Part shown: in pieces, positions 15,083-64,000 of the stretch
Numbering within the stretch: the first letter of the stretch is position 1
Layout of the letters: the number at the start of each line of letters is the position of its first letter
Assembly (NCBI GenBank): GCA_002269645.1
Contig: NIVC01000093.1
Location: forward strand, 620,001 to 684,000
Source: Macrostomum lignano
Lineage: Eukaryota
Length of the DNA stretch: 64,000 nucleotides
Direction of reading: 5' to 3'
Notes under the pieces: generated by a model
Database searches by the model: none
The model's input: only the letters and a program-made list of their open reading frames with translations
What the model was told of the DNA's origin: nothing
Made by a program: the position numbers and the translations under genes

Positions 15083-16794
15083 GGACTTAGTAGGCTTATA
15101 AAACTATAAGACTTTGCATATCAATGTGCCATAATGTAAACCAAGAAAAAATTACTTAATGCCATCGATTTTCAATTGTTTGAAACTTCAAGGCTGATTT
15201 TCTTTAAATTTATAGTTCATATAAGTTTACATAGACATGTATATATTTATAGATACATAAAATACATAAAATAGGCCTACGAAATAGATACATAGATCAT
15301 ACTTATACTATGTATGGACCAAACATCTATGTAGGCCTATATCTATGCCTGCATGCAGCAGATAGGACCTAGCCGAGTCTCAACTCAACACTAGCTTGGC
15401 CAAATTCTCATTTAGCATGTCAAAAGCTATACTGATGATAGGCTGCTAGGTGTACCACAAAAATACACAATATACTGATTCTGAATAGAATATTGAAGGT
15501 AGTTATAAGTTAGGTAGGCCATTAAAGCCTATCATTATCTGATCGAAAATGTCATGTCTAAGCAAGAAGGACGAAAGTACTACTTCTTTGTAATATTAAA
15601 ATGGACTCAGGCTAACCATTCGATAGGGTGACTGAATTTTGAACCTAAAGGGTCTGCCTGTGCCTTTTCTTGGAAAGTGCGCAAATCCTTTGATTTTAAA
15701 ACATGTAGTTAATACGTAATTTAACAAAAAGAAAACACAACCAAAAATCAAAAGCTACAAAACAGTAGTAGCTTTTTTAAAATAAATTCTTAGTTAATAC
15801 GCTCGTAAATATTATTTCCGTTAAAAAATTTAAAGCACATATTTCTGTCAGTCGCATTTGAGCATGATTCTAACTGTGAGAATTTTAAATTTCAGCATTT
15901 AAATTTAACAGCTCAGCTAGCTCCCGCACTGCCACTAATGAACCGCCTCGTCGCTGACTTGCAGGTGCCTGAGCTGACCCCTCAGGTCTCAGGCTGCCGC
16001 TGCTGCCTGCCTGCCTGCCCCTTTCGCCTGTTCTGCGAGTGCGTGCGCGCAAGGGGCCTCTCTCTTCGTCCTACGTCTGTTTTTTGTGTATTTCGCTGTT
16101 TTTCTCATATAGGCTCAGAACTTTGTAGCTTCCACCTTTGTATGTCTAGTGCCCCTTATATAAACTAAATAGCCAACAATTGGTTCGTAGGCTATGCCCT
16201 ACGTAACATGAATAACTTACGCTGCATGTTATTCCGGAAGTTATTTTGCACGTAATTCCGAATGTTATTCTGTACATTATTCCGCACATATACAGTGTAA
16301 CAGTGGTTCATGGACACTGTCAAAAATAGCCATGCCCATGGTTTTTGGACACTTCGCCATATAAAAAAAATGGTTAATAAATCTAGATGATAAAATGAAC
16401 AACTTTTGAAGACACTTCCCAAGATTTTGCAAGGCTGTGTAAATTGTTATTTGATTGTTATTGTTATATTTGTTACTTAGGCCCCTACTCAAAAATAGGG
16501 TCTAGTCATAGAATATAAGATTAAATACAAAAACAAGCTTAGAGATTCAACTTTTCACCTATAATTGGCATCTAAATACATGCTAGGCCCTATAGTCCTA
16601 TACATAAGTGCTCATTGTAGGTCCTAATTTTTTCTATGAGTATGAGTAGGACTAGGCCCCTAGGCCTATGAACTTGCCAAGCTTTTATAATTATTTTTGC
16701 TTGCTTGCTTAGAAAATCACTAGGGCCTAAAGCTGATAGGAATTATTACTTCTATAACTAAGCAAAGTTACAAAGTATAGTGGCTATATAATAT

Positions 16795-19662: not shown

Positions 19663-19852
19663 TATAATATTATGTAATTATGCTAATGGATTTCTCCCTG
19701 TTCCACCTGCACGACAAGGACTTAACTAGGCTTAACCCTTGAATATCACAACCTTTATTATTCTAGCTTTATAGTTTGCATGTATTATAATATAAAAGTG
19801 CAAAGTTTCTTATAAAAATGGATGACAAAATGTCTTAGATAGGAAGTAGATA

Positions 19853-22720: not shown

Positions 22721-23940
22721 AGTAGATAATAGTGTCTTCTTTATTTCTAATTTTTAATATTATAGATGACAAAAAGATACAATAACAAAGTTTCTAAAAT
22801 ATGAGTAGATAACAAAGTGGTAGGCCTAGGCTTAGATTGATAAAGTGAAATTAAAAAAATAGGTTAAACCTGGCCTAATCTAAACCTAAAATTGGGAACA
22901 TGTAGCTGATAGTGCTAGGTTAATCTATCTTGTCTAGATCTATTTTTCCTAATTCACTTCATTAATCTTACCACTTTGTTAATTTACTCATATTTTTGGA
23001 CACTTTGTCTAGAGTATACATGTCATATATGTCATATATCAAAAATTAGGGCTAAAACACTAGAGCCTAGCAAGTATTCAACTCATCAATTTTAGCTAAA
23101 AAAGTTGAGCTCTATCAAGTAGCTATTTTTATTACAAAAATTGATTGCTAGGCTAATAAACAATAAAGCATTGTAGGTAGTAACCAAAAGCAATTACCAT
23201 AAACAAAAATTAATAATGCATTAGGCCCTATAGTTACAAATATAAAAACATACTTTATATATGAATATGATATATGAATATTAGAAAATATAGCCTATAT
23301 AAATAATAATAGATAAAAAATAGCTAGGAAAGGACAATATAGACAATTGGAATAGTGATTGTCTTAGCTAGCCAAGATGTTTCAGAACAATCAAAGCTAA
23401 CTTGGAAAATAAAGAAAATGACCTGTAACGATCCTCCTTTTATCTTATGATTTATCTTTAACCTTATATCTTTTTCTGGCTAAAAAAACATTAAGCATAC
23501 ATGCTCTGCTGTATGACTTTTAATAGCTTTCAAGAAGCCAAAAGATGCCATATTATAGATATTGTAGGGTTCTTTGAAACCAGGTGTCCTTAAGAAACCA
23601 GGCTGTCCTATTAATAGTCTATTGCCAACATGGTATTGAAGCTAATAGACAAAAAATATAATTAGAATTGAAATTTTTGAAGTTTTTAATAAAAATAATT
23701 AACTAGAAACATTGACAAGATTTTTGTATTAAAAATGATCCCAAAATAAGTATTTTATTTTGATTTAATTTAATTTAAGTATTTTAATTTAAATAGATGC
23801 AATTTTGGGCAAAAAAAAACAATTCATTTTGAGTTTTAAATCCACTTTGAAATCTTACTAGCTAACTGAATAAATATATAGTAAATGCCAAATAAATGTT
23901 TAAGATATGATTCCAACTAAGAGTGAAATAGAAAAAAACA

Positions 23941-39756: not shown

Positions 39757-41080
39757 GTCTATCTATCTAGCTCGTATTTATGTTTTTTTCGCTGACATTT
39801 AAAGAAATACAGAAGTGTGTCTTACAGATGGAGAGTATTTTGAGAAAGCTGTCTTAAAGGATGTTATAACAATGATTGAAAGCAACAAATTTTCTTTTTT
39901 TCGACTTTACAAATCTGGGAAATCAGCGTGGCATAAAAATGCTTTTACACGACACGGTGTCCTCTCTGCTCTTTATCTTGGTGGTGGGCGATGTGCTCCG
40001 CCGATGTCAACGGGTCTACGGCTACGACTACGATGGGTCTACAATGTCTACAGCAACGGCATGAAGTGCGATAGCATTGAATCTCTGCCACTGACTACGA
40101 TGCGACAGCAAGCGCTGCGCCAAACTCTGACAACACTTACTGAAACCTTTTGGTTGCAGGCTCAGCCGATCTTCTGACTATGCTACAACCGTCGTTACAC
40201 ATATACATGCATCCCTCGTAGCCACTTTAAAGCAGCCCTTGGAAATGACATCTCCACTATTTAGACGTGCTTTCTGGCGTGGCCTGAACAAACAAAGGCT
40301 TCTAACTTAATAATACGAAACTTGCTGTAGTGTTCCTCGCATTTTTTACCGTAACGATGACAGCCTCTTTTCATGTTGGAGGATGTGCGTGTCTGCTGCA
40401 GCAAAGCTCGCGTTGAAAGCAGGTAACTTCCGGTTTAGGCAAGAAATTCAATCAGAATTTTCAAACTCAGCATACTGTAATGATTATTATTATAGGTACA
40501 TGATGATAGTTATTAAAATAATAACTTTATTCCGATATCTCCCTTTGCGTGTATTGATTCAAGCTTAAACAACATCTACTCTCAGAGTCAAGAATACGTG
40601 AGATAAACCTGCATATTTGTCGGTTTTGTAATAACTAAATTTTGTAATAACTAAATTTTGTAGTAACTAAATCTTTACAAATTTCGAGCTCGTAGATTAT
40701 TCAAGGTTTTACCATGTGTACTATTATACCGAAGCAGGATTTGAAGAAATCATATTTTTCTCGACCGTTTTGTCTATGGCAAAATCCCATTCAGCACTGT
40801 ACGTTCCCTAGGAATTAGAGAGCATGCTGAAGGCACTGGAGACACGAAAAATTTCTTTACCGGCCTCCAGCTCATTTCTAAGAAAGTCAGGTGCAATGTC
40901 CTTCAGGTTAAGCTGTCCATAGGGCTATTACGAGTGTACCATATGCTTTGGTTTCTATATGACTTGGCTGCAGTCTGCAGCTCCGTTCAGGAACGTCTTT
41001 GGAAAAGTCCGCTCTACGAAAACTATGGATATTTTGTTAATCTTTTTATCATGACAAGTTCGAAGAATTAAAACATCAAT
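39140..41080 (+). mobile_element. Decayed non-LTR retrotransposon reverse-transcriptase remnant, interrupted by (TCTA)n
   Basis: SFRPSRASKYQVTQL resembles GFRPGRSTxDQI; HDTVSSLLFILVVGDVLRRC resembles GDTLSPLLFILV; stops and frameshifts. Confidence 0.5.
39475..39770. repeat. (TCTA)n microsatellite
   Basis: Direct reading. Confidence 0.97.
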
Positions 41081-41084
41081 TTCT

Positions 41085-41157
41085 GTCCGTCTGTCTGTCT
41101 TAGTGTCTGTCTGTCTGTGTCTGTCTGTCTTAGTGTCTGTCAGTCTGTCTGTCTTAG

Positions 41158-41242
<85 letters not shown>

Positions 41243-41243
41243 T

Positions 41244-41338
<95 letters not shown>

Positions 41339-41519
41339 TAGTGTCTGTCTGTCTGTCTGTCTTAGTGTCTTTCTGTCTGTCTTAGTGTCTGTCTGTCTGT
41401 CTGTCTGTCTTAGTGTCTGTCTGTCTGTCTGTCTGTCTTAGTGTCTGTCTGTCTGTCTGTCTTAGTGTCTTTCTGTCTGTCTGTCTTAGTGTCTTTCTGT
41501 CTGTCTGTCTGTCTGTCTT

Positions 41520-41550
<31 letters not shown>

Positions 41551-41551
41551 T

Positions 41552-41606
<55 letters not shown>

Positions 41607-41633
41607 GCCTGTCTGTCTGTCTGTCTGTCTTAG

Positions 41634-41666
<33 letters not shown>

Positions 41667-41817
41667 TAGTGTCTGTCTGTCTGTCTGTCTTAGTGTCTTT
41701 CTGTCTGTCTTAGTGTCTGTCTGTCTGTCTGTCTTAGTGTCTTTCTGTCTGTCTTAGTGTCTGTCTGTCTGTCTGTCTGTCTGTCTTAGTGTCTGTCTGT
41801 CTGTCTGTCTGTCTTAG

Positions 41818-41870
<53 letters not shown>

Positions 41871-41871
41871 T

Positions 41872-41902
<31 letters not shown>

Positions 41903-41903
41903 T

Positions 41904-41982
<79 letters not shown>

Positions 41983-42075
41983 GCCTGTCTGTCTGTCTGT
42001 CTGTCTTAGTGTCTGTCTGTCTGTCTGTCTTAGTGTCTTTCTGTCTGTCTTAGTGTCTGTCTGTCTTTCTGTCTT

Positions 42076-42154
<79 letters not shown>

Positions 42155-42315
42155 TAGTGTCTGTCTGTCTGTCTGTCTTAGTGTCTTTCTGTCTGTCTTA
42201 GTGTCTGTCTGTCTGTCTGTCTGTCTTAGTGTCTGTCTGTCTGTCTGTCTGTCTTTCTGTCTGTCTGTCTGTCTGTCTTAGTGTCTTTCTGTCTGTCTGT
42301 CTGTCTGTCTGTCTT

Positions 42316-42346
<31 letters not shown>

Positions 42347-42347
42347 T

Positions 42348-42430
<83 letters not shown>

Positions 42431-42611
42431 GCCTGTCTGTCTGTCTGTCTGTCTTAGTGTCTGTCTGTCTGTCTGTCTTAGTGTCTTTCTGTCTGTCTTA
42501 GTGTCTGTCTGTCTGTCTGTCTGTCTTAGTGTCTGTCTGTCTGTCTGTCTTAGTGTCTTTCTGTCTGTCTGTCTGTCTGTCTGTCTTTCTGTCTGTCTGT
42601 CTGTCTGTCTT

Positions 42612-42702
<91 letters not shown>

Positions 42703-42703
42703 T

Positions 42704-42740
<37 letters not shown>
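41085..42740. repeat. (TCTG)n microsatellite with TTAGTG interruptions, directly downstream of the GPCR stop codon
   Basis: Direct reading. Confidence 0.97.
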
Positions 42741-42741
<1 letters not shown>

Positions 42742-42753
42742 CCTAACAGCCAT

Positions 42754-44963
<2,210 letters not shown>

Positions 44964-47445: not shown

Positions 47446-50400
47446 ATGAGAGCATCGCTGCACTTTGCTTTTGTTGCGCTTCTCTTTTGTAGTTTAGCAG
47501 CGGGTAAGCAGTGAATCAATAGATGATATTAATTTTAACTTTTCCTACTGTAACCTGAAAAAACTATTAACATTACTTTTGTTTATAATACGAGCGTAGT
47601 CTAGCACTCATTTATAAATACTTTTTAACATTTTTAATATTTTTTATATTTGTACTCCATTTTAAAAAGTCAGTTTTTATTTAAATTCTGTTCTGCTTTT
47701 ATTCTATATCGAGTTTAGATGTGTATTAATTATGCATAACTAATATTAATTTTATTGAATTCTCGTACCCACCAGTATGCATATTTTGTTACAAAAGTAA
47801 TTGACATCAAATAAAGGAAATTCTATATTAACTCAATCAAAATCAAAAACCGAAATTAAAAGTCTTTCTCCATCGCCGTTCAAAGCCCTGCCAGGTTCGA
47901 ACCCCTGCTCCCGCGGTCCCGGCCACTGGTGCAGCAGCCTAGCGGCGGCCAGAGCCTGCGGCGCCATTGCCCACTGCGCCCAACTCTGGAGCCGGAGCTC
48001 GAACCTCGGACCTGACCCGGCCGATGCCACCGAGTCCTGCACCACCTGCCGCCTGCTGGCCGACGATCTGGCGCGCCTCGGCGTTGCTGAAGGTCCAGAC
48101 GGGATGCGCTCAGCCGGTGTCACCGCCTGCGGTCTTGTCGCCGATCCGAGCGCTGCTCGGGCCTGTCAGCGTCTACTGACCGCGGAGTCGGCGAACCTGC
48201 CGGAACTGCTGGCTGCCGGCTTGCAGCCTGGCAGAGCCTGCGTCATGGCCGGCCAGTGTCGACAGCAGGCGATGCTGTCATCGACTAGTGCACCGGCAAC
48301 GCCACAGCCGCCAACTGCCAGCAGTGAGGGAAACTTTTCGTGAATCACGCCTATACTGTTGCTTTAGAATTATAATTATAGAACTTTGGTATTGAAACAG
48401 TCACTGGGATGAGTGTCCTATTGGGTCGCCTTGCGAGACGGGCTTGGGAAGGGCTGTATTTTGTATAGCATTCGCCCCTCTAAGCTTCCCTATCCGGCCC
48501 TCGGATCCTTTGAAACTTTACAATCGCGATCCAGCCCTGTTGAAGGCTTGTGTCTCTTCTCAGCAATCTTCTCTCCTCTCTCTTCTTTTCTCTCCTCTCC
48601 TCTCCTCTCCTCTCCTCTCATCTCATCTCTTCTCTGCTCTTCGCTCATCTCCTCTCCTCTCCCTTCTACTCTCCTCCCTCGTCTCTCCTTTCTTCTTCTA
48701 ATCTTATCTCTCATCTCTATTCTATCTCATCCCTCCTCTGGCCAGCAAGTCACGCGCTAGATTCTTTATCTGGCCCTAGTGGTAAACAAATTTTGCTGAC
48801 CCCTGGACTATAACCTGGCATACTGAACCTCGATTGAGTTCCAGATTGAACTCAATGTAAATTACGTATTACATGTGATCTCTGGTTCGAATCCGTGCGA
48901 GAGTGTACGTGCCTGACGATTAGACAGTCAGGACCCTGTGTGATGAGTGCGTGCCTGAGTACAGTTATTGGCGCGATTTGTGGGACGATCTCGCCAAACA
49001 AGCCATCGCGCTCGGGTGCCCACAACTCTCTCCTGCGAATCTGTATTTTTACAATATATTGATATTTTATAGATATTTTAAAGCGACAAATTGTATTATT
49101 GTCCCCACCCACCCCATATCCCCACTGTGCCAGGCAGCTGCAGCGCCTGTCCCTCTGTTCTAGAAGCCATCGGCACCTCCGTCATCCGAGTGGGCGTCAG
49201 TCCAGCTCACGCCGTCGCCCGTCTGCGCCGTAGAGTTTGTCCAACACTGGCCAACAAGAGGCAGCGAACAATGTGCCACAAACTGGCTGGTCAGCGAGAC
49301 CTATTCCGAATTGTACTGCAGCTAGCTAGGGGCGTTGTGAGTACAGTATGAACTGTTTGAGTTTTTGTTTAATTCAAAATGCCATCTTCATCTTCAGATT
49401 GCCTGTCCAGACACCACCTTCAACCACAAGCCTTCAGCACTCCGAAAAGCGAACACTTCCACAAAGCCTTCCTTCTATAAGTCTGCATTATCTGCTTTCA
49501 GTCGCTTTTCATCTTTCTTCTGCTCCATTGTTCCAGCTGTCACCACGCATGGTGATAAGTTGCGATGACGACCGATCCTATGACCAGTATAAAACGCGCT
49601 GACGTGGCTCGGGGTTTAGTGGCGCTGGTCAAACGACTTTGGCTTAGAAATATCAGACTAGCTAAATGACGACAGAGTGTAATAGTTACAGCTGGCCTTG
49701 CCGCGAAATTGCACTGAGCTAGAGAGAGAGAGAGTGAGAGTTTGATAACATTATCGGAATAAATCTGGACAAGCATGCAGGTACCTGATAAGAAGAAAGC
49801 CTCCAGGGTTATTCAATTCTGGCTTGAATAGGCCGGTTTAGATAAGCAGAAGACAAGTGGAGTTCTTTTATGCCTGCTTGCTTTATGCAAGCGAAATTGA
49901 AGGTCGACAGCAGTTCAGCGATAAGCGCGTCTGACTCTGCACGACCCCTGTGGGCCTGTGTTGGAAGAAAATTAGCCAAGGGGTTTTCGTGTGATTTACA
50001 CCCAACGAGGACCAACCCCCAAGGTACAGAGAGTGTACATGTCGGACTATTTGTCGAAATGGGATGATGTCGCTCAAGGCCTTGCAACTCTTCTGCGAAA
50101 ATTTATGCAGATATAAAAAATACTCTATTCCAGCCACCGAAACAAGTTTGCACCGAATTTCGACTGTGCAGTTCGGCGCCTTTCGCTGGCCACCCAGTGA
50201 TCCAATTGATGCAACTGCAGGTGAGCTACTCGTACTACTTCTAGTACGAATAATGATGAACCTTCCATTCAATATTAAACTCAATCAGACTAGAACTATT
50301 TCATCACCCATCGCAAACGCATGCCCAGACAAATAAGGCCATCAAACTAGCTGAACCAATCGAGTGCCAGGTGTGCGAAGACCTGGTCAACCAGGCCCGG

Positions 50401-53400
50401 CAGATGCTGCGCGACGGCCGCACACAGGCTGAGATTGAAAGCTTCGTCGAAAGCATCGTCTGCAACGCGCTACCATCGTCAGAGAAGGACCAATGCGTCA
50501 AGAATGTGCAGCAATACGGGCCGATTCTGTTTCAACTGCTTGCCTCAGAGCTGGATCCTAAAACTGTCTGCGAGGCTGTGGGCGCCTGCGGAAAAACTGG
50601 CAGAACTGATCGGCTGAAGCCCAAACTGGGTGTCGGTCCGCAGTGCCTGCTGTGCGAGTTCGTCATGCGAGAGGTTGACAAGCAGCTCAGCCAGAACGCT
50701 ACCCAGACCGAGATCGAGGCAGCTCTTCTGCAGGTGTGCTCTCTGCTGCCCCAGACTGTCCGTCAGGAGTGCGACGGCTTTGTGCAGCAGTTCACTCCCA
50801 TCATCATCCAGCTGCTGGTGAACGGCTTGAGTCCACAGAGGATCTGCACAGTGCTCGGTCTCTGCACCGCCTCTACACAACGTCCGCCTGTCACACCGGT
50901 TCGAAAGCCCGTCCAAGCAGGTCCGCAGTGTCTGATTTGCGAGTTCGTCATGCGAGAGGTCGACAAGCAGCTCGGACAGAATGCAACTCAAGCCGAGATC
51001 GAGACAGCTCTTCTGCAGGTGTGCTCTGTGCTGCCCCAGACTGTCCGTCAGGAGTGCGACAACTTCGTTCAGCAGTTCACTCCGACCATCATCCAGCTGC
51101 TGGTGAACGGCCTGAGTCCTCAGCGGGTGTGCTCCGCGCTTGGTCTCTGCTCTCAGCGTGCTCCGCTGCACCGTCTTGCTCCAACGCCGAAGTCGTCAAC
51201 CAAATCGTCATCGACTACCTGCGACGTCTGCCAGACGGTGATGCAGTACGCGAAGTCTCTGCTGCAGGAGAACGCCACCGAGCAGGAGATTGTGCAGCTG
51301 GTTGAGCGAGTTTGCAGCTTCCTACCGACTGCCGAGCAGGCGGCCTGCAAGTCGTTCATCAACGAATACGGAGCGTACGTGATCCAGCTGCTGCTGCAGG
51401 ACGCCAACCCTAGACAGATCTGCCAGGTGAGTTGCTCGAATAATTACTAGATGGTTTTTTTCAAGGCTCGAATTACCATCCTGAGCATTAATTACTCGTA
51501 CAAGCTTTAATGTGTTTGTGCCAAATAGTAATTAATTATGATGATAAGGTCTTGTTTATACCGGTAGATGTCTACAATACTCTAATATAGTAAATCATTA
51601 GTGTTGAAGTGTTTCTAAATTTATTTTCTGAGTGAAGACACAACACGAAAAGCTACGTGTTAAGAGGTATTTGGTGAAATTTCATAGAAGACAGAAATGC
51701 TATAGGAAGGGTTGTGCTGGGCAAATCATCAAAAAGAAATAGGTTAAAAAACAGGTGCAGGCGATTGAGCCAGACAGTCAAGTCATGAATTTCAGTTTAA
51801 AATCAGTTAACTGCGGTTAAATAAAGGCAAGTAGCCACATTTTCACTCTCTCAACAGCTGGTGGGACTCTGTACGACTACTAAAATGACGCCTCCAGTAG
51901 CTTCATTGGTTCGAAAACCGGTCCGAGCGAGTCCGCAATGCCTGACGTGCGAGTTCGTCATGCGAGAGGTCGAGCAGCAGCTCAGTCAGAACGCTACCCA
52001 GACCGAGATCGAGTCAGCTCTTCAACAGGTGTGCTCCCTGCTGCCCCAGACTGTCCGTCAGGAGTGCGACGGCTTTGTGCAGCAGTACACTCCCATCATC
52101 ATCCAGCTGCTGGTGAACGGCCTGAGTCCTCAGCGGATCTGCACAGTGCTCGGTCTCTGCACCCAGGTTCAGCAACCGGTATCGCCAGTTCGCGCCAAGC
52201 TAGGTGCGACGTCAACTGCCTGCGACACCTGCCAGACAGTGGTAGTCTATGTCAAGTCGCTGCTGAAAGAAAACGCAACGGAACAAGAGATCATTGACAC
52301 GGTGGAGAAAGTCTGCAACTTTCTGCCAACAGCTGAGCGACCTACCTGCAAGATGTTTGTTGACCAGTACGGACCGTACGTGATCCAGCTGCTGCTGCAG
52401 GACCTCAACCCGATGCAAGTCTGCCAGGTAACTTCTTTCGGCGCGTACTTTATCTCAATCTAGAGAAAAATCAAAATAATTGACTGATTGCTAACCATTC
52501 CTACTTTCAGTTACTTGGACTTTGTACGCAAAAGAAACTTCAAGCAGCAGTTCGAAAGCAGAAGCAAATCAGTGCCGGTCCGCAGTGCCTGCTGTGCGAG
52601 TTCGTCATGCGAGAGGTTGACAAGCAGCTCAGCCAGAACGCTACCCAGACCGAGATCGAGGCAGCTCTTCAACAGGTGTGCTCCCTGCTGCCCCAGACTG
52701 TTCGTCAGGAGTGCGACGGCTTTGTGCAGCAGTACACTCCCATCATCATCCAGCTGCTGGTGAACGGCTTGAGTCCACAGAGGATCTGCACAGTGCTCGG
52801 TCTCTGCACCGCCTCTACACAACGTCCGCCTGTCACACCGGTTCAAAAGCCCGTCCAAGCAGGTCCGCAGTGTCTGATTTGCGAGTTCGTCATGCGAGAG
52901 GTCGACAAGCAGCTCGGACAGAATGCAACTCAAGCCGAGATCGAGACAGCTCTTCTGCAGGTGTGCTCCCTGCTGCCCCAGACTGTCCGTCAGGAGTGCG
53001 ACAACTTCGTTCAGCAGTTCACTCCGACCATCATCCAGCTGCTGATGAACGGCCTGAGTCCTCAGCGGGTGTGCTCCGCGCTTGGTCTCTGCTCTCAGCG
53101 AGCTCCGCTGCACCGTCTTGCTCCAACGCCGAAGTCGTCAACCAAGTCGTCATCGACTGTCTGCGACGTCTGCCAGACGGTGATGCAGTACGCGAAGTCG
53201 CTGCTGCAGGAGAACGCCACCGAGCAGGAGATCGTGCAGCTGGTTGAGCGAGTTTGCAGTTTCCTACCGACTGCCGAGCAGGCGGCCTGCAAGTCGTTCA
53301 TCAACGAATACGGAGCGTACGTGATTCAGCTGCTGCTGCAGGACGCCAACCCTAGACAGATCTGCCAGGTGAGCCATTTGGATAGTTTTTACATAGAATG

Positions 53401-53762
53401 GATCTATAGCATCATTTATCTCAAGTCATAGGACCTAGAGTCACAGCTGTTTCCAGCAAAGCTGAAGCAAACCAGTGGCTGAAAAAAAGTTACGCTCGTA
53501 TGACCCTCTTTGTGCAATAAGCCATCTCTGGCGTCTCCGTTATGGAAAACCCCGAAGCAAGTCCGATTAGCTACCAAAACAATTTGGCTTCCAGCTACTG
53601 GGCCTGTGCACCAACAGCCGTTCAACCAAGTTGTCAGCGCTGCTGCCCGACCGCACGCTGCGTTTTGTTCAGCCTGCCCGAGGGTTCCCCGCCACCGCCA
53701 ACGGCATGGTGCAAATGGTTCGCGACCATAGACGTGGTCATCGATCCGAGCCGGTCGTCTGA
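47446..53762 (+). CDS. PSAP: Prosaposin-like precursor: signal peptide, one SapA domain, 11 SapB domains (about 1200 aa)
   Basis: Exons 47446-47503, 47886-48323, 49134-49336, 49398-49551, 50134-50220, 50351-51426, 51858-52427, 52511-53368 and 53595-53762 in consistent phase. SapA CSRGPGHWC..C.AIAHC..W; repeated CxxC..C..C..C..GLC. Exons 4-5 and the exon-6 acceptor are less certain. Confidence 0.88.
48555..48735. repeat. CT-rich low-complexity tract in prosaposin intron 2
   Basis: Direct reading. Confidence 0.85.
50635..53374 (+). repeat. Recent intragenic duplication: about 50635-51432 copied at about 52577-53374
   Basis: Constant 1942-bp offset at both ends and few substitutions. Confidence 0.92.
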
Positions 53763-54164
53763 GCACGGCAAAGCGAACTCGTACTAATTAAATTCCGTTT
53801 TTATTTCAGTATATTGAAAGACCCACAGCGCGTTGGTCGCAACAGAGGCTATGGTATGGGTCTCGTTCGATTTGATTTTTCAACTTTCGATTCTCATTTT
53901 CCGCTCTATTTTTCTTATATAGCTAATCATTTAACTTCTTATCCGCTAAATTTATGTAATTTGCGTTGAACCTAAATTGTGATCGGTTTTGTAATTCAAT
54001 AGTCGTATCAGGTGCTAATAAATCACATTTGCACATTTCAGCAATGTTAGTTCATATGCGGTTTTTTGATACTTATATAATTGCCTGCGAGAATTTTCAA
54101 TTCACGATTTTACTCAATTTATAGGAGGTTGCTTCAAAATGGACTTCATGCTTTCCTCCTAAAT

Positions 54165-54349
54165 AACTAACTAACTAACTAACTAACTAAATGACTAACT
54201 AACTGACTAACTAAATAACTAACTGACTAACTAATTAACTAACTAACTAACTAACTAACTAACCAACTAACTAACTGACTAACTAACTAACTAACTAACT
54301 AACTAAATAACAAACTAACTAACTGACTAACTAACTAACTAACTAACTC

Positions 54350-54386
<37 letters not shown>

Positions 54387-54423
54387 ATAACTAACTAACT
54401 AACTAACTAACTGACTAACTAAA

Positions 54424-54478
<55 letters not shown>

Positions 54479-54479
54479 T

Positions 54480-54568
<89 letters not shown>

Positions 54569-54704
54569 GACTGACTAACTAACTAACTAACTAACTGACT
54601 AACTAACTAACTAACTAACTAACTAAATAACTAACTAACTAACTAACTAACTAACTGACTAACTAACTAACTAACCAACTAACTAACTAACTAACTAACT
54701 AACC

Positions 54705-54744
<40 letters not shown>

Positions 54745-54745
54745 G

Positions 54746-54776
<31 letters not shown>

Positions 54777-54825
54777 GACTAACTAACTAGCTAACTAACT
54801 AACTAACTAACTAACTGACTAACTG

Positions 54826-54860
<35 letters not shown>

Positions 54861-55085
54861 GACTAACTAACTAACTGACTAACTAACTAACTAACTGACT
54901 GACTAACTAACTGACTAACTAACTAACTAGCTAACTAACTAACTAACTGACTAACTAACTAACTGACTAACTAACTAACTAACTAACTGACTAACTAACT
55001 AACTAACTAACTAACTAACGAACTAACTAACTAACTGACTAACTAACTAACGAACTAACTAACTAACTGACTAAATAACTAACTG

Positions 55086-55136
<51 letters not shown>

Positions 55137-55157
55137 GACTGACTAACTAACTAACTG

Positions 55158-55192
<35 letters not shown>

Positions 55193-55209
55193 GACTGACT
55201 AACTAACTG

Positions 55210-55250
<41 letters not shown>

Positions 55251-55289
55251 ATAACTAACTAACTAACTAACTGACTAACTAACTAACTG

Positions 55290-55320
<31 letters not shown>

Positions 55321-55455
55321 GACTAACTAACTAACTGACTTACTAACTAACTGACTAACTAACTAACTGACTAACTAACTAACTAACTAACTGACTAACT
55401 AACTAACTGACTAAGTAACTAACTGACTAACTAACTAACTGACTAACTAACTAGC
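54165..55455. repeat. (TAAC)n microsatellite, about 1.3 kb
   Basis: Direct reading. Confidence 0.97.
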
Positions 55456-55692
55456 TATCTCGGCTTAAGGGGGAAGAAAAAGAAAATAAAGATAAAGAAT
55501 ACGAAGTTAGGGCGGTCGCAGCCCAGAATTCAGCGTTTATGTTTTCTAACTTAAACAAAGGTGAAAAGGTTAGGCGGTTGGAGGAGATATATATTTGAGT
55601 ACATTGTGCGTACAGTGAAATAGAGAAAATAATTAATCTATCGATGAAACTTTTGGATAGCCTTAGGCCAACTCATTTTTCGATACTCCTTA

Positions 55693-55960
55693 TTGAGCCA
55701 TGGCATCTCAGCATCTCCCCATTGAGCCATGGCATCTCAGCATCTCCCCATTGAGCCATGCCATCTCAGCATCTCCCCATTGAGCCATGGCATCTCAGCA
55801 ACTCCTCCATTGAGCCATGGCATCTCAGCAACTCCTCCATTGAGCCATGGCATCTCAGCAACTCCTCCATTGAGCCATGGCATCTCAGCAACTCCTCCAT
55901 TGAGTCATGGCATCCCAGGAACTCCTCCATTGAGTCATGGCATCTCAGCAACTCCCTCTT
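55693..55960. repeat. 30-bp tandem repeat (CCATTGAGCCATGGCATCTCAGCAACTCCT)n downstream of methyltransferase A
   Basis: About 8-9 units; paralogous array at 58652-58862. Confidence 0.92.
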
Positions 55961-56167: not shown

Positions 56168-57667
56168 TCACAGTATGCTGCAACAGCATCGAAAAATTGT
56201 TTCTTCGTTAACGGCAGGACCGGCGCAGTGCCCAGATTTTACGTTGCGCAAATCGCCTTCGAAATACCGTTGTTTGTCATGTCCCTGCTCTACCTGACAA
56301 ATTTCTGTATGATTGTTCATAAAAGACTCGCTCTGCTCATCCACCATTTGAACTCTGCACTGCTCCTGCAACACCTGCTGTCTCTGCCGTTCCTGTTGCT
56401 GCTTCTGTGTTTGCTGCTCTTGCAAACGCCGTTGCTGCTCCAGCAACTGTTGCTGTCTCTGCTGCTCCACCAACTCTTGCTGTCTCTGCTGCTCCAGCAA
56501 CTCTTGCTGTCTCTGCTGCTCCAGCAACTGCTGCTGTCTCTGCTGCTCCAGCAACTCTTGCTGTCTCTGCTTCTGCTCCAGCAACTCTTGCTGTCTCTGC
56601 TGCTGCTCCAGCAGCTGTTGCTGTCTCTGCTTCTGCTCCAGCAGCTGTTGCTGTCTCTGCTGCTGCTCCAGCAGCTGTTGCTGTCTCTGCTTCTGCTCCA
56701 GCAACTGTTGCTGTCTCTGCTGCTGCTCCAGCAGCTGTTGCTGTCTCTGCTTCTGCTCCAGCAACTGTTGCTGTCTCTGCTGCTGCTCCAGCAGCTGTTG
56801 CTGTCTCTGCTTCTGCTCCAGCAACTGTTGCTGTCTCTGCTGCTGCTCCAGCAGCTTTAGCTGTCTCTGCTGCTTCAGCAACTTTTGCTGTCTCTGCTGC
56901 TCCAGCAGCTTCTGCTTTCGCTGCTGCTCCAGCAACTTCTGTTTCTTAAGAGATTCGAGAGCATCATTCTTGGCTGGAACATAACTCAGGTGAAAGTTTC
57001 CTCGTTTTCTCGTGTACAGACAAATTCTCTCGCCTGTAAATGTTCGCCTAAATCCGAACTCCTTCAGTTGCTGTACTTGTCTGATCTCAATATCCATTAC
57101 AAGAATGTATCCCACACTGCTCAGCAACTGAGGAAGCTTCACGCCAACTAGACTCAAATTCCTACCAGCGTTAGCAAAACTCAGACTGATGATGTCGAAT
57201 GGTTGAGCCGTTAGCTTTCGGTCAAGCACAAAGTCCTCCATGGGCATTTCAATGAACTCCCGTCTCGATGTGTTGAAACACCAATCCGATGTGGCCTGTG
57301 CGAATTCGCCGTCAAAAGCGCTCCAGTCCCAGGGAAACGCGTCAACTCCAATGCAGCTCTGCTGCAGCAGCTTACCGCCATGCACCTGACTAACCTCGCC
57401 TTTGTGTACAACATCTTTGATGGCTCTGACGACTCCAAGCAGGTCGCTGCCGGGACCGCAACCGAGCGACAAGATCCGGATCTTCCGAGGCTGCGGCTCG
57501 CTGCACACTGACTGCAGAAGTTGCTTCACCTCGGTTCGTATTTGCATCCGCATGAGTTCAGACTTACGTATAAACTGTTCTTGTGTATAAGCCTTGCGGA
57601 ATTCCGGGTTCCTGTAGAATCTAAAGTCCTCTTTGTGCTTGGCATCAAGCCATTCCTGGTAGTCCAT
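56168..57667 (-). CDS. Putative class I SAM-dependent methyltransferase, copy A, with a Gln/Leu-rich coiled-coil tail (499 aa)
   Basis: Single ORF with motif I RILSLGCGPGSDL, post-I CIGVD and motif IV-like FDIISLSF; (EQQQRQQQLL)n encoded by 27/30-bp repeats at about 56430-56945. Confidence 0.8.
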   Translation of the reverse strand: MDYQEWLDAKHKEDFRFYRNPEFRKAYTQEQFIRKSELMRMQIRTEVKQLLQSVCSEPQPRKIRILSLGCGPGSDLLGVVRAIKDVVHKGEVSQVHGGKLLQQSCIGVDAFPWDWSAFDGEFAQATSDWCFNTSRREFIEMPMEDFVLDRKLTAQPFDIISLSFANAGRNLSLVGVKLPQLLSSVGYILVMDIEIRQVQQLKEFGFRRTFTGERICLYTRKRGNFHLSYVPAKNDALESLKKQKLLEQQRKQKLLEQQRQQKLLKQQRQLKLLEQQQRQQQLLEQKQRQQQLLEQQQRQQQLLEQKQRQQQLLEQQQRQQQLLEQKQRQQQLLEQQQRQQQLLEQKQRQQQLLEQQQRQQELLEQKQRQQELLEQQRQQQLLEQQRQQELLEQQRQQELVEQQRQQQLLEQQRRLQEQQTQKQQQERQRQQVLQEQCRVQMVDEQSESFMNNHTEICQVEQGHDKQRYFEGDLRNVKSGHCAGPAVNEETIFRCCCSIL

Positions 57668-58651: not shown

Positions 58652-58862
58652 CCCATTGAGCCTTGAAATCTCAGCAACTCATCCATTGAGCCATGGCATC
58701 TCAGCATCTCCTCATTGAGCCATGGCATCTCAGCAACCACCCATTGAGTCTTGGCATCTCAGCAACTCCTCCATTAAGCCATGGCATCTCAGCAACCACC
58801 CATTGAGCCGTGGCATCTCAGCAACTCCCACATTGAGCCTTGGCATGTCAGTAACTTCCCCT
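58652..58862. repeat. 30-bp tandem repeat downstream of methyltransferase B
   Basis: Paralog of 55693-55960. Confidence 0.9.
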
Positions 58863-59028
58863 TTAAAATGAGTGAAGACAACATGAATATTGAAACGGTT
58901 TTTAATTTACTTTCGCTTACATATGTATTAATACATAGTGACATACATGTACAAGAGTTTACAGCCTGTAAAATTATTTTGTTACACATACCAAATACTT
59001 GTAAGAGATAAACAGTAAAGCAGACTCG

Positions 59029-59690
59029 TGTAGTAAGTAAACTCAGACAGTTATCGCGAGGCGGAAAATAGTACGACTCTCACTAGAGCCCACAATCTGT
59101 TAGTATAGCTACATTTGGGGTGCAAACACCCCTCCGATTATTTATTGATTGGGCGTGGCCCGATATACATAAGTAAAGTTTACGGTAGAGAGGATTTAAA
59201 GTTCGAGCATTACTTTGTGAATAAACGAATTCACAGTTCACAGATATTGACAGTTGACAGGTTGGTTTACACAGTTCAAATCATTTGTACTGCTTCTTGT
59301 CACCGCACTTCGCCGCGCGCGGATGCGGACGCGACGCCAGCGGCCCCTCTCGAGTCTCCGAATCTCCAGGAAGGACGCCGGCCGTTGTCGCTGGCGGAGC
59401 CTCCGAGACCGGCGGATCTGGGGTGACCAGCCTGACGGCTGTGTAATGACGCGAGTTACAGTAACAACGGCGCCAGCTGGAAGTGCCGACGCGGTGCAGC
59501 CTCAGGGAGTTTCCAGACACTCGTTCGACTTTCCAGGCGCCGCTCTTGAAAGGCGTCTGCGCCTTCCGTGCTCCGACGCGACGCCAGCACGACATCGCCG
59601 ACTCGGATCCCGCCGCTATGTGGCCTACGCTTTGCGTCTGCGTGTCGCTTCATCGCCGCCTTGGCGTTGGCATCGGTTTGACGCAGCTTC
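59029..59690 (-). mobile_element. Ty3/Gypsy 3' fragment: integrase C-terminal region, PPT and LTR-like end
   Basis: DANAKAAMKRHADAKRR..IRVGDVVL, then after a +1 shift RRVGARKAQTPFKSGAWKVERVSGNSL, stop at 59281. GGAGGGG is followed by TGT (59128) ... ACA (59029). Absent from paralog A. Confidence 0.7.
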
Positions 59691-60514
59691 TGCTTCAGTA
59701 AATTTTGCGGTCTCTGCTTCTGCTTCAATAAATTTTGCGGTCTCTGCTGCTCCAGCAACTCTTGCTGGCTTTGCTGCTGCTCCAGCAAGTTTTGTTTCTT
59801 AAGAGTTTCAAGGGCATAATCTTTGGTTGGAACATGTGGTTGGTGAAATTTTCCTTGTTCTCTTGTGTACAGACAAATTTTTTTGCCAGTAAATGTTCGT
59901 CCAAATCCGTACTCCTTCAGTTGCTTCACTGGTCTAATGTCATTATCCATCACAAGAATGTATCCCACATTGCTCAGCAACTGAGGCAGCTTCACGCCAA
60001 CTAGACTCAAATTCCTACCAGCGTCGACAAAACTCAGACTGATGATGTCGAATGGTTGAGCCGTTAGCTTTCGGTCAAGCACAAAGTCCTCCATCGGCAT
60101 TTCAATGAACTCGTGTCTTGATGTCTTGAAACACCAAGCCGATCTGGCCTGTGCGAATAGGACGTCGAAAGCGCTCCAGTCCCACTGAAACGCGTCAACT
60201 CCAATGCAGCTCAGCTGCAGCACCTGACTAACCTCGCCTCTGTGTACAACATTTTTGATGGCCCTGACGACTCCAAGCAGGTCGCTGCCCGGACCGCAAC
60301 CGAGCGACAAGATCCGGATCTTCCGAGGCTGCGGCTCGCTGCACACGGACTGCAGAAGTTGCTTCACCTCGGTTCTTATTTGCGTCTGCACGAGTCTAAA
60401 CTTGCGTATGAACTCTCCTTGTGTATAAGCCTTGCGGAATTCCGGGTCGCTGTAGAATCTCAAGTCCTCTTTGTGCTTGGCATCAAGCCATTGCTGGTAA
60501 ATTGGACAGTCCAT
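59456..60514 (-). CDS. Putative SAM-dependent methyltransferase, copy B, fused to a Gypsy integrase tail
   Basis: Close paralog of A (same RILSLGCGPGSDL, CIGVD and FDIISLSF motifs). Shared ATG at 60514; the frame stays open to 60646, where a possible acceptor TTTCTAG lies. Confidence 0.78.
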   Translation of the reverse strand: MDCPIYQQWLDAKHKEDLRFYSDPEFRKAYTQGEFIRKFRLVQTQIRTEVKQLLQSVCSEPQPRKIRILSLGCGPGSDLLGVVRAIKNVVHRGEVSQVLQLSCIGVDAFQWDWSAFDVLFAQARSAWCFKTSRHEFIEMPMEDFVLDRKLTAQPFDIISLSFVDAGRNLSLVGVKLPQLLSNVGYILVMDNDIRPVKQLKEYGFGRTFTGKKICLYTREQGKFHQPHVPTKDYALETLKKQNLLEQQQSQQELLEQQRPQNLLKQKQRPQNLLKQKLRQTDANAKAAMKRHADAKRRPHSGGIRVGDVVLASRRSTEGADAFQERRLESRTSVWKLPEAAPRRHFQLAPLLL

Positions 60515-61771: not shown

Positions 61772-62122
61772 AGACGCGAATGAACTCCCGTCTTGATGTC
61801 TTGAAACACCAAGCCGATGTGGCCTGTGCGAATTCGCCGTCAAAAGCGCTCCAGTCCCAGGGAACGCGCCAACTCCAATGCAGCTCAGCTGCAGCAGCCT
61901 ACCGCCATGCACCTGACTAACCTCGCCTTTGTACAACATCTTTGATGGCTCTGACGACTCCAAGCAGGTCGCTGCCGGGACCGCAACCGAGCGACAAGAT
62001 CCGGATCTCCCGAGGCTGCGGCTCGCTGCACACGGACTGGAGAAGTTGCTTCACCTCTGTTCGTATTTGCATCCGCATGAGTTCAGACTTACGTATAAAC
62101 TGTTCTTGTGTATAGGCCTTGC
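61772..62122 (-). pseudogene. Methyltransferase copy C, truncated and frameshifted fragment
   Basis: Near-identical to A/B from KAYTQEQF to EFI; a 2-nt deletion (CCTTTGTACAAC vs CCTTTGTGTACAAC) follows motif I; both ends missing. Confidence 0.88.
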
Positions 62123-63283: not shown

Positions 63284-63618
63284 TCAATCAAGCGGTCCGG
63301 CAGCATCTGACAGCTCAGCCTCGTACCGGTAGATCGGCACCCCTGGCAGGATGATCGACGTAAATTGGTCGGTCCTGATGAAGCCCAGCCTCTCGTAGAT
63401 GTCGACGGCGTATTGCTGCAGCTGCGTGGTGCCCAGCTGCATCCGCCGGTAGCCCCGGTTGGCGCACAGTCGCATGAGGCGCCGGCAGACGGCGTCGCCA
63501 ACTCCGTGGCCCCGGTAGGCGGGCAGGACGCCGAGGCGCTGCAACTCGCAGGTGTCGCCGTCCAGGTGCAAACTGGCAACTGTGCCGACAAGGGGAGGCT
63601 GCTGCTGGCCGGCTTCGG
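63284..63618 (-). CDS. GNAT N-acetyltransferase (NAT8/Camello-like), last exon; upstream exons probably outside the window
   Basis: LVGTVA..ELQRLGVLPAYRGHGVG (acetyl-CoA motif RxxGxG)..GYRRMQLGTTQLQQYAVDIYERLGF; acceptor AATGCAG at 63619. Confidence 0.85.
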
Positions 63619-63784
63619 CTGCATTGGGGTGAATTTGGTGCCATTCTTCAGGGATTTTCAGTTTTTTTATTGAAATCGTCAAGGGCTTATAGCGATTTTA
63701 AGGTGAAGTGACTCGAGGAGACTCTAAAACGACGAGATTTCACAGTAGTAAGTCGCCAAAAAGTTTTCAAAGAGTCAATTTGCG

Positions 63785-64000
63785 GCGTTTTGATTGTCTG
63801 CGACTCTGAAATCACTCTGGGGCCGTAGAGTCGCATTTGAGGCGTTTTAACTTTTGATTGTCTGCGACTCTGAAATCACTCTGGGGCCGTAGAGTCGCAT
63901 TTGAGGCGTTTTAACTTTTGATTGTCTGCGACTCTGAAATCACTCTGGGGCCGTAGAGTCGCATTTGAGGCGTTTTAACTTTTGATTGTCTGCGACTCTG
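63785..64000. repeat. 64-bp tandem repeat with an internal hairpin; runs off the right edge
   Basis: Units at 63791, 63855 and 63919; each contains TGCGACTCT...AGAGTCGCA. Confidence 0.92.

What the first reader, a model, noticed from the sequence alone, without database searches (positions are those of the whole stretch)
59029..60514. Methyltransferase B is fused to a Gypsy integrase C-terminal domain; one extra G separates it from a full fusion
Seen: the MTase frame runs directly into LRQTDANAKAAMKRHADAKRR..IRVGDVVL. Removing a single G in CTGGCG (about 59587) gives VVLRRVGARKAQTPFKSGAWKVERVSGNSLRL...YK-stop (59281), which resembles the SH3-like C-terminal region of Ty3/Gypsy integrases. A PPT and a 100-bp TGT..ACA segment follow, and then homology to copy A resumes. 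Inference: capture of a retroviral-type nucleic-acid/chromatin-binding domain by a methyltransferase, conceptually like the MTase-chromodomain fusion N4CMT of bdelloid rotifers, and possibly a way to target methylation to retroelement DNA. This is speculative.
Basis: partly seen in the sequence, partly recalled or inferred. Interest (0 to 1): 0.8.

Follow-up and report, generated by a model that had tools for sequence, protein, structure and literature searches.

The report
Retrotransposon remnant truncating a methyltransferase-like gene
One of three neighbouring copies of an orphan methyltransferase-like gene has had its 3' end replaced by the last ~660 bases of a Ty3/Gypsy-type retrotransposon, so its reading frame runs by accident into a broken piece of integrase; this is ordinary gene decay, not a working domain fusion.

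Summary
ORF B (59456-60514, minus strand) leaves its homology with paralogue A inside the Q-rich repeat. It then reads into sequence that, in two adjacent frames, matches the C-terminal end of a retrotransposon pol protein. The comparator is P0001 (64% identity, E 1e-13; 51%, E 2e-24). P0001 lies in phase behind an ORF with RT, RNase H, zinc-binding and integrase-core domains. That ORF's best solved relative is Ty3 Gag-Pol (E 3e-67).

After the natural pol stop come a ~145-nt 3' UTR, a purine tract and a 100-nt TGT...ACA repeat. This repeat abuts host sequence that, in copy A, lies 18 nt after the stop codon. The comparator element also has only about 105 nt between its purine tract and its primer-binding-like site, so a 100-nt LTR is credible.

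- The piece is a terminal remnant with its UTR, PPT and LTR still attached.
- The integrase frame is broken once.
- Only one of three copies carries it.
- No fusion relative exists in 1.8 billion representative proteins.
- The "methyltransferase" rests on a SAM-binding motif and sub-threshold Pfam hits, with no DNA-methyltransferase motifs.

Most likely this is an insertion followed by a deletion. Interest is low.

The parts
59456..60514 (-). ORF B as it stands (352 codons): methyltransferase-like domain, short Q-rich repeat, then element-derived sequence up to the first stop in this frame
59780..60514 (-). Methyltransferase-like domain of copy B. It has the SAM-binding-type motif ILSLGCGPG and is 82% identical to copy A.
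   Evidence: Pfam Methyltransf_23/36/34 matches are below threshold (E 0.002-0.1).
59694..59779 (-). Remnant of the Q-rich 30-nt repeat: about 3 units in B against 17.5 units in copy A. The gene-element junction lies at its 3' end.
59281..59693 (-). Remnant of the pol gene of a Ty3/Gypsy-like LTR retrotransposon. It covers the C-terminal region of integrase, downstream of the catalytic core, and includes the natural stop codon. It is broken by one frameshift and has no internal stops in the homologous frames. GC is 0.65.
   Evidence: Comparator context.
59136..59280 (-). 3' untranslated region of the element, containing AATAAA at 59146-59141
   Evidence: The comparator L001 has an equivalent ~170-nt UTR with AATAAA before its PPT.
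59129..59135 (-). Polypurine tract (GGAGGGG) immediately 5' of the LTR
59029..59128 (-). 3' LTR, 100 nt, TGT...ACA. Its outer end abuts host DNA.
   Evidence: L001 has ~105 nt between its PPT and its PBS-like site.
58924..59028 (-). Host 3' flank of copy B, homologous to copy A from 18 nt after A's stop codon. It leads into the shared 30-nt minisatellite (58654-58856).
56168..57667 (-). Copy A (499 codons), the intact paralogue with the empty insertion site (about 56150/56151), a long Q-rich repeat and its own C-terminal tail
61779..62122 (-). Copy C, a 344-nt fragment of the same gene family, 96% identical to copy A and not an intact ORF

Best explanation
A Ty3/Gypsy-like LTR retrotransposon with unusually short (~100 nt) LTRs integrated in sense orientation about 18 nt downstream of the stop codon of copy B. 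Copy B belongs to a locally duplicated, orphan, SAM-methyltransferase-like gene family.

A deletion then removed everything between the gene's Q-rich repeat and the integrase C-terminal coding region. What was lost is the rest of the repeat, the gene's own C-terminal tail and stop, the 5' LTR, gag, protease, RT, RNase H and the integrase core. Alternatively, a 5'-truncated copy was captured together with a deletion in one repair event.

The new junction happens to be in frame, which has a one-in-three chance. ORF B therefore reads into integrase-derived codons, loses the integrase frame at a single frameshift, and stops soon after.

The product, if made at all, is a C-terminally truncated paralogue with a short non-native tail and no complete integrase C-terminal domain. 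The remnant may supply the transcript's 3' UTR and an AATAAA signal. It cannot move, having no 5' LTR, primer-binding site, gag or enzymatic domains.

Shown: the homology, the anatomy, the empty site in copy A and the broken frame. Inferred: the order of events, the lack of function and the use of the poly(A) signal.
For: - Tail homology. The only real hit of the second-frame ORF among 1.84 billion proteins is P0001 (E 2.6e-15). The two window frames tile P0001 without overlap, and tblastn gives two HSPs in two minus frames (E 1.5e-14 and 4e-22).
- P0001 is the end of a pol. It lies on contig L001, whose ends overlap by 30 nt. Its frame is open from the first contig base and in phase with a 1156-codon ORF that runs off the other end. 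That ORF carries RVT_1, RT_RNaseH, Integrase_H2C2 and rve. It matches Ty3 Gag-Pol 7q5b at E 3.3e-67 over RT to integrase. The next residues align colinearly, though weakly, with Ty3 1292-1344.
- Terminal anatomy. The order is pol stop, UTR, PPT, 100-nt TGT...ACA, then host flank. L001 has the same order with ~105 nt between its PPT and a TGG-starting PBS-like site.
- Empty site. In copy A the flank is contiguous with the stop codon, 18 nt away.
- Foreign composition. GC is 0.65 in the integrase-derived coding part and 0.49 in the gene's own domain.
- Nothing else of the element is in the window.
- The locus is decaying. Copy C is a fragment, and dN/dS between A and B is 0.5.
- No fusion relatives were found.
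Against: - The junction is in frame, and the integrase-derived part has only one defect and no stops. This would also fit a young or even functional fusion whose single defect is an assembly error.
- dN/dS of 0.5 shows the methyltransferase-like domain has not evolved entirely neutrally since the A/B duplication.
- No read, transcript or population data were available, so loss of function is inferred, not shown.
- The parent element in this genome was not found. The comparator is from another organism (about 70% nucleotide identity).
- The LTR boundaries in L001 are inferred from PPT and PBS-like motifs only.
Confidence: 0.8

Rival explanations
1. Real chimeric gene. The frameshift is a sequencing or assembly error or a rare allele. 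The organism then makes a methyltransferase-like protein carrying the whole integrase C-terminal region (about 125 residues), which might bind nucleic acid or multimerise, as the GPY/F region of Gypsy and retroviral integrases is reported to do.
For: - The junction is in frame.
- There is only one defect and no stop codons across ~410 nt of integrase-derived coding sequence, and the natural stop is retained.
- dN/dS is 0.5 in the methyltransferase-like domain.
- Precedents exist for host-gene/transposon-protein fusions such as SETMAR and CSB-PGBD3 (PMC3424704).
Against: - As read, the frame is broken.
- The UTR, PPT and LTR are still attached.
- Only one of three local copies has the tail.
- No such fusion exists in 1.84 billion representative proteins or in the contig collections scanned.
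- The region after the core in this element family matches no Pfam domain.
- The GPY/F position reads G-A-W, not the canonical motif.
Confidence: 0.1
2. Same end product, different origin. A 5'-truncated reverse-transcript or element fragment was captured directly at a chromosome break in copy B, together with loss of about 0.7 kb of the gene. This would replace the two-step model of full-length integration followed by a later deletion.
For: Only the 3' terminal ~660 nt of the element is present, and its 5' boundary lies inside a tandem repeat of the gene, which is a fragile context. Capture of retrotransposon cDNA at breaks is established from work on yeast Ty1 (my own knowledge, not checked here).
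Against: The outer LTR end is exact (ends in ACA) and joins host DNA that is otherwise undisturbed relative to copy A. That is what integrase-mediated insertion leaves. The target-site duplication that would decide the matter is gone along with the 5' side.
Confidence: 0.25
3. The integrase-like tail is ancestral to the gene family, and copy A lost it by replacement with an expanded Q-rich repeat and a new C-terminus.
For: None specific. It is considered only because polarity was inferred from two paralogues.
Against: - The tail comes with a pol stop codon, PPT and LTR, and has a foreign GC content.
- The LTR end abuts sequence that in A is contiguous with A's own 3' UTR.
- Copy C is closest to A.
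Confidence: 0.03
4. Chance resemblance: the tail is not derived from an integrase at all.
For: Pfam and the word-seeded protein search found nothing for the tail.
Against: E 2.6e-15 against 1.84 billion proteins; two abutting frames on one comparator; and that comparator continues a Ty3-like pol.
Confidence: 0.01

Closest known systems
Truncated (3'-terminal) copies of Ty3/Gypsy (Metaviridae) LTR retrotransposons inside or next to host genes
   Same: - End of pol (the integrase region after the DDE core), then stop, 3' UTR, PPT and an LTR with TG...CA ends, then host DNA.
- The comparator element has the PR-RT-RNase H-IN order and is closest to Ty3 among solved structures.
   Different: - The LTR is only 100 nt, and the comparator element is only ~4.4 kb. 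Both are at the short extreme for the group as far as I know.
- The GPY/F position reads G-A-W.
- There is no chromodomain.
- The parent element of this genome was not seen.
SETMAR (Metnase): SET methyltransferase gene fused to a mariner transposase (PMC3424704)
   Same: A methyltransferase-type host gene is joined at its 3' side to transposable-element protein-coding sequence.
   Different: - SETMAR has an intact, expressed reading frame conserved in primates, and its mobile-element part is a DNA-transposon transposase.
- Here the frame is broken, the mobile-element part is a retrotransposon integrase tail with its LTR still attached, and no conservation or expression is known.
N4CMT of bdelloid rotifers (PMC8885841, PMC10406627)
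   Same: The idea of a methyltransferase joined to a chromatin- or nucleic-acid-reading module that directs it to transposons.
   Different: - N4CMT is a bacterial-type amino-methyltransferase fused to a chromodomain and is biochemically characterised.
- The protein here lacks the amino-methyltransferase catalytic tetrapeptide and the C5 motifs, has no chromodomain, matches no curated methyltransferase model, and the fusion is not intact.
Domesticated Gypsy/Ginger-type integrase genes GIN1 and GIN2 (PMC3424704, PMC2836005)
   Same: Host genes containing integrase-derived sequence, including the GPY/F region.
   Different: - The GIN genes keep the zinc-binding and DDE core domains, have introns, and are conserved across vertebrates.
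- Here only the region after the core is present, and it is frame-broken.
CSB-PGBD3: a transposon used as an alternative 3' terminal exon (PMC3424704)
   Same: A mobile element supplies the 3' end of a host gene's reading frame and its transcript end.
   Different: CSB-PGBD3 arises by splicing into an intact transposase ORF and is conserved. Here the join is a genomic deletion junction into a broken ORF.

Membership tests
Ty3/Gypsy (Metaviridae) LTR retrotransposon (the remnant) | Homology of the coding part to a pol protein with PR-RT-RNase H-IN domain order | tested here: met
   - The tail matches P0001.
- P0001 is in phase with an ORF carrying RVT_1, RT_RNaseH, Integrase_H2C2 and rve in that order, with a weak aspartic-protease hit upstream.
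- Its best solved relative is Ty3 Gag-Pol, E 3.3e-67.
- The domain order is shown for the comparator, not for the window, which holds only the end of pol.
Ty3/Gypsy (Metaviridae) LTR retrotransposon (the remnant) | Polypurine tract directly upstream of a 3' LTR with TG...CA termini | tested here: met
   GGAGGGG at 59135-59129, then TGT...ACA at 59128-59029.
Ty3/Gypsy (Metaviridae) LTR retrotransposon (the remnant) | Two LTRs, a primer-binding site and a target-site duplication (a complete element) | tested here: not met
   There is no second copy of the LTR or of any other part in the window, and host sequence follows the LTR directly. The piece is a remnant, not an element.
Ty3/Gypsy (Metaviridae) LTR retrotransposon (the remnant) | GPY/F motif in the integrase C-terminal region (PMC2836005) | tested here: inconclusive
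   At the corresponding place the window reads G-A-W and P0001 reads D-A-W, with conserved flanks. The aromatic residue is kept and the proline is not. No Pfam C-terminal model matched.
SH3-like integrase C-terminal domain | Small beta-barrel fold | tested here: inconclusive
   The AlphaFold model of P0001 had mean pLDDT 52. It showed a long helix followed by three short strands, which is too uncertain to search with.
Class I SAM-dependent methyltransferase (host gene) | Glycine-rich SAM-binding motif after the first beta strand | tested here: met
   ILSLGCGPG is present in both copies.
Class I SAM-dependent methyltransferase (host gene) | Match to a curated family model above its threshold | tested here: not met
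   - Only Methyltransf_23, Methyltransf_36 and Methyltransf_34 matched, at 12-18 bits against cut-offs of 26-27 bits.
- NCBIfam gave nothing relevant.
- A PDB sequence-profile search gave nothing.
- All of the weak Pfam hits are methyltransferase families.
Class I SAM-dependent methyltransferase (host gene) | Rossmann-like seven-strand fold | tested here: inconclusive
   The AlphaFold model had pLDDT 43. The best Foldseek hit had E 0.04 and TM 0.16.
DNA methyltransferases (N4C/N6A amino-methyltransferases such as N4CMT; C5 enzymes) | Catalytic Asp/Asn/Ser-Pro-Pro-aromatic tetrapeptide, or the Pro-Cys and Glu-Asn-Val motifs of C5 enzymes | tested here: not met
   None of these patterns occurs in copy A or copy B.
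Domesticated host-transposon fusion genes (SETMAR, GIN, CSB-PGBD3 type) | One intact reading frame through the element-derived domain | tested here: not met
   There is one frameshift inside the integrase-derived part, and the homology continues in another frame.
Domesticated host-transposon fusion genes (SETMAR, GIN, CSB-PGBD3 type) | Conservation of the fusion in paralogues or orthologues under purifying selection | tested here: not met
   - Copies A and C lack the tail.
- No fusion relative was found in public protein or contig collections.
- Orthologues in sister species could not be examined.
Domesticated host-transposon fusion genes (SETMAR, GIN, CSB-PGBD3 type) | Expression of the chimeric transcript or protein | not testable with these tools
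   No read or transcript data were available.

The most novel reading that the evidence does not exclude
The frame break is an assembly error or one allele, and copy B is expressed as a SAM-methyltransferase-like enzyme carrying a complete Gypsy-integrase C-terminal (GPY/F-type) module. That would be a young, lineage-specific chimera whose integrase tail could tether or multimerise the enzyme on retroelement nucleic acid or intasome components.
Probability: 0.06. Interest if true: 0.6.

Novelty: new member of a known kind. Interest (0 to 1): 0.2.

Why it matters
As it stands this is a textbook case of a retrotransposon remnant remodelling the 3' end of a duplicated gene. It is useful for annotation: copy B should be flagged as a chimeric or probably degenerate paralogue, and 59029-59693 should be masked as an LTR-element remnant. 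It does not bear on any open question.

Two side results have modest value. First, the element family appears to have LTRs of only about 100 nt in a ~4.4-kb element, at the small end of what LTR finders are tuned for. Second, the methyltransferase-like gene family has no detectable relatives in very large protein collections. Only if the fusion proved intact and expressed would it become an interesting young example of a host enzyme acquiring an integrase module.

Tried and rejected
- **Pfam on the tail and on P0001:** no family. The integrase origin therefore had to be shown through a natural comparator.
- **Word-seeded protein searches:** ORF B and the tail ORF gave no hits. The same search with P0001 returned only itself.
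- **Exact look-up of ORFs A, B and the tail ORF:** not in the collection.
- **P0002 and P0003 from the full-HMMER search:** these are long bacterial repeat proteins that match a low-complexity Pro/Ala/Gly-rich stretch. I rejected them as spurious.
- **Contig scans:** none found relatives. These were metagenome contigs with the tail alignment and with the methyltransferase-like alignment, prokaryotic genome contigs, and viral contigs with the comparator pol. Two earlier scan attempts failed for lack of a conserved stretch.
- **AlphaFold models:** the methyltransferase-like domain (pLDDT 43) and P0001 (pLDDT 52) were both too poor to use. Foldseek on the former gave nothing significant.
- **NCBIfam and PDB sequence searches of the methyltransferase-like domain:** nothing.
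- **Rfam and tRNA scans of the window, for organism clues:** nothing.
- **Literature search for the comparator's run accession:** nothing.
- **Source organism:** not identified, either for the window or for the comparator.
- **An intron bridging the frame break:** rejected, because the homology to the comparator is contiguous across it.
- **Whether the rest of the element lies elsewhere in the window:** it does not.

Full report
**What is there**

The last 8 kb of the window hold three minus-strand copies of one gene.
- Copy A (56168-57667, 499 codons) is intact.
- Copy B has its ATG at 60514 and its first in-frame stop at 59456.
- Copy C (61779-62122) is a 344-nt fragment, 96% identical to A.

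A and B are colinear at the DNA level from about 240 nt upstream of the ATG to the beginning of a Q-rich 30-nt coding repeat. That repeat has 17.5 units in A and about 3 in B. They are colinear again downstream, where both run into the same 30-nt minisatellite. Between these two blocks B carries about 660 nt (59029 to about 59693) with no counterpart in A and no other copy in the window.

**Is the tail integrase-derived?**

Pfam and the word-seeded protein search found nothing for it. Instead I searched the second-frame ORF, the one that ends at the stop at 59281, on its own with full HMMER against 1.84 billion representative proteins.

The search gave one meaningful hit, P0001 (168 aa, E 2.6e-15, 56% identity). 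It also gave two long bacterial repeat proteins that match a low-complexity stretch, and I discarded these.

The two window frames, kept as separate rows, tile P0001 end to end. The piece in the gene's frame is 64% identical (E 1e-13). The piece in the adjacent frame is 51% identical (E 2e-24). tblastn of P0001 against the window gives exactly these two HSPs in two minus frames and nothing else of note.

The integrase-derived segment is therefore broken by one frameshift. It has no stop codons in the homologous frames and ends about where the comparator ends.

**What P0001 is**

P0001 lies on a 4432-nt Logan contig (L001, run SRR31628392) whose two ends overlap by 30 nt. This is what a collapsed LTR-element graph looks like.

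The P0001 frame is open from the first base of the contig and in phase with a 1156-codon ORF that runs off the other end. That ORF has RVT_1, RT_RNaseH, Integrase_H2C2 and rve in this order, plus a weak aspartic-protease hit upstream.

Among solved structures its best match by far is Ty3 Gag-Pol (7q5b, E 3.3e-67, from RT through the integrase core). A caulimovirus polyprotein and retroviral RTs follow. The residues just after the core align colinearly, though weakly (E 0.46), with Ty3 residues 1292-1344.

The window's tail thus corresponds to the part of a Ty3/Gypsy-type integrase that follows the catalytic core. [quoted passage not shown] At that position the window reads G-A-W and P0001 reads D-A-W, so the motif is only approximately present. 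The SH3-like fold could not be confirmed, because the AlphaFold model had pLDDT 52.

**Terminal anatomy**

After the pol stop (59281-59283) come, in order:
- about 145 nt of AT-rich sequence containing AATAAA;
- GGAGGGG (59135-59129);
- immediately afterwards, a 100-nt segment beginning TGT and ending ACA (59128-59029).

The next base starts the sequence that, in copy A, lies 18 nt after A's stop codon. Copy A therefore shows the empty site.

A 100-nt LTR is unusually short. However, the comparator has the same layout: pol stop, about 170 nt with AATAAA, a purine tract at 720-733, and a TGG-starting primer-binding-like site at 840-849. That leaves only about 105 nt for its LTR. The two LTRs are not alignable, and the coding parts are only about 70% identical at the DNA level, so L001 comes from a different organism or lineage.

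The integrase-derived coding part has GC 0.65, against 0.49 for the gene's own domain. No other part of a pol is present in the window.

**How it arose and what it does**

The simplest history has two steps. First, the element integrated in sense orientation just downstream of copy B's stop codon. Second, a deletion ran from the Q-rich repeat to the integrase C-terminal coding region. That deletion removed the gene's own C-terminus and about nine tenths of the element.

A one-step capture of a 5'-truncated copy at a break gives the same product. The two routes cannot be told apart here, because the 5' side, with any target-site duplication, is gone.

The junction is in frame, which has a one-in-three chance. 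As read, only a minority of the integrase-derived codons are in the gene's frame, and ORF B ends at 59456. No complete integrase C-terminal domain is encoded. The remnant lacks everything needed for mobility. It may provide the transcript's 3' UTR and poly(A) signal, but this is inference.

**The host gene**

The 'methyltransferase' label is weak.
- Both copies have a glycine-rich SAM-binding-type motif (ILSLGCGPG).
- The only Pfam families that appear at all are methyltransferase families (Methyltransf_23 in both copies, plus Methyltransf_36 and Methyltransf_34 in B). All score 12-18 bits against cut-offs of 26-27.
- NCBIfam, a PDB sequence profile, a 5.8-billion-protein word-seeded search and contig scans found no relatives.
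- The AlphaFold model is unreliable (pLDDT 43) and Foldseek found nothing significant.
- Neither the catalytic tetrapeptide of amino-methyltransferases nor the C5 motifs are present. Nothing therefore points to DNA as the substrate.

dN/dS between A and B over 245 codons is 0.5. This is compatible with one constrained and one relaxed copy.

**Comparison with known systems**

The feature behaves like the many truncated LTR-element insertions that remodel gene ends. As a concept, host-enzyme/transposon-protein chimeras exist. Examples are SETMAR, CSB-PGBD3 and the GIN genes (PMC3424704), and N4CMT joins a methyltransferase to a chromodomain (PMC8885841).

The defining features of a domesticated fusion were each tested, with these results:
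- an intact frame through the recruited domain: not met;
- conservation in paralogues or orthologues: not met;
- expression: not testable here.

**Verdict**

The structural part of the interpretation, a Gypsy-type integrase C-terminus followed by a PPT and a short LTR, is confirmed. The functional part, domain capture to target methylation, is not supported.

I put 0.8 on the remnant/decay explanation, about 0.1 on a real fusion hidden by a sequence error, and rate interest at 0.2.

Noticed in passing
L001:549-963 and L001 as a whole: The comparator contig is a ~4.4-kb circular assembly graph (30-nt end overlap) of a Ty3/Gypsy-like element. It has a single long gag-pol-type frame and only about 105 nt between its purine tract and a TGG-starting primer-binding-like site. 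This is a very compact element with LTRs of about 100 nt, a size that standard LTR finders may miss.
   Followed up: partly
window 59141-59146 and L001 about 697-702: AATAAA sits just upstream of the polypurine tract in both the window remnant and the comparator. A poly(A) signal placed before a 100-nt LTR is odd for the usual U3-R-U5 logic. It may be chance in AT-rich sequence.
   Followed up: no
window 56168-57667, 59780-60514, 61779-62122: The methyltransferase-like gene family has no detectable relatives in 5.8 billion proteins (word-seeded search) or in the metagenome and prokaryote contig scans. Copy A carries a 17.5-unit 30-nt repeat encoding LLEQQ(Q/R)RQQQ-type heptad-like text.
   Followed up: partly
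window 16794-19665 and 19850-22721: A 2872-nt inverted repeat, 99% complementary, with a 184-nt spacer. It could be a large palindrome or foldback, or an assembly artefact.
   Followed up: no
window 50371-51450 and 52607-53431 (+): Two neighbouring ORFs made of repeated saposin B domains (SapB_1/SapB_2, E 1e-37 to 1e-53). These are tandem paralogues in a GC-rich (0.51-0.53) island.
   Followed up: no
window 63284-63682 (-): A GNAT-family acetyltransferase ORF (Acetyltransf_1, E 2.4e-14).
   Followed up: no
window 54159-55457; about 40965-43500; 63788-64000: Long simple-repeat arrays:
- (CTAA)n over 1.3 kb;
- an array with 8/12-nt period over about 2.5 kb;
- a perfect 64-nt tandem repeat running off the window end.
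Together with the GC mosaic (0.28-0.53), this suggests a repeat-rich eukaryotic region. No tRNA or Rfam family was found in the window.
   Followed up: no
window 55685-55955 and 58654-58856: The same 30-nt minisatellite lies downstream of both copy A and copy B. The duplicated unit is therefore about 2.2 kb: gene, short flanks and minisatellite.
   Followed up: partly
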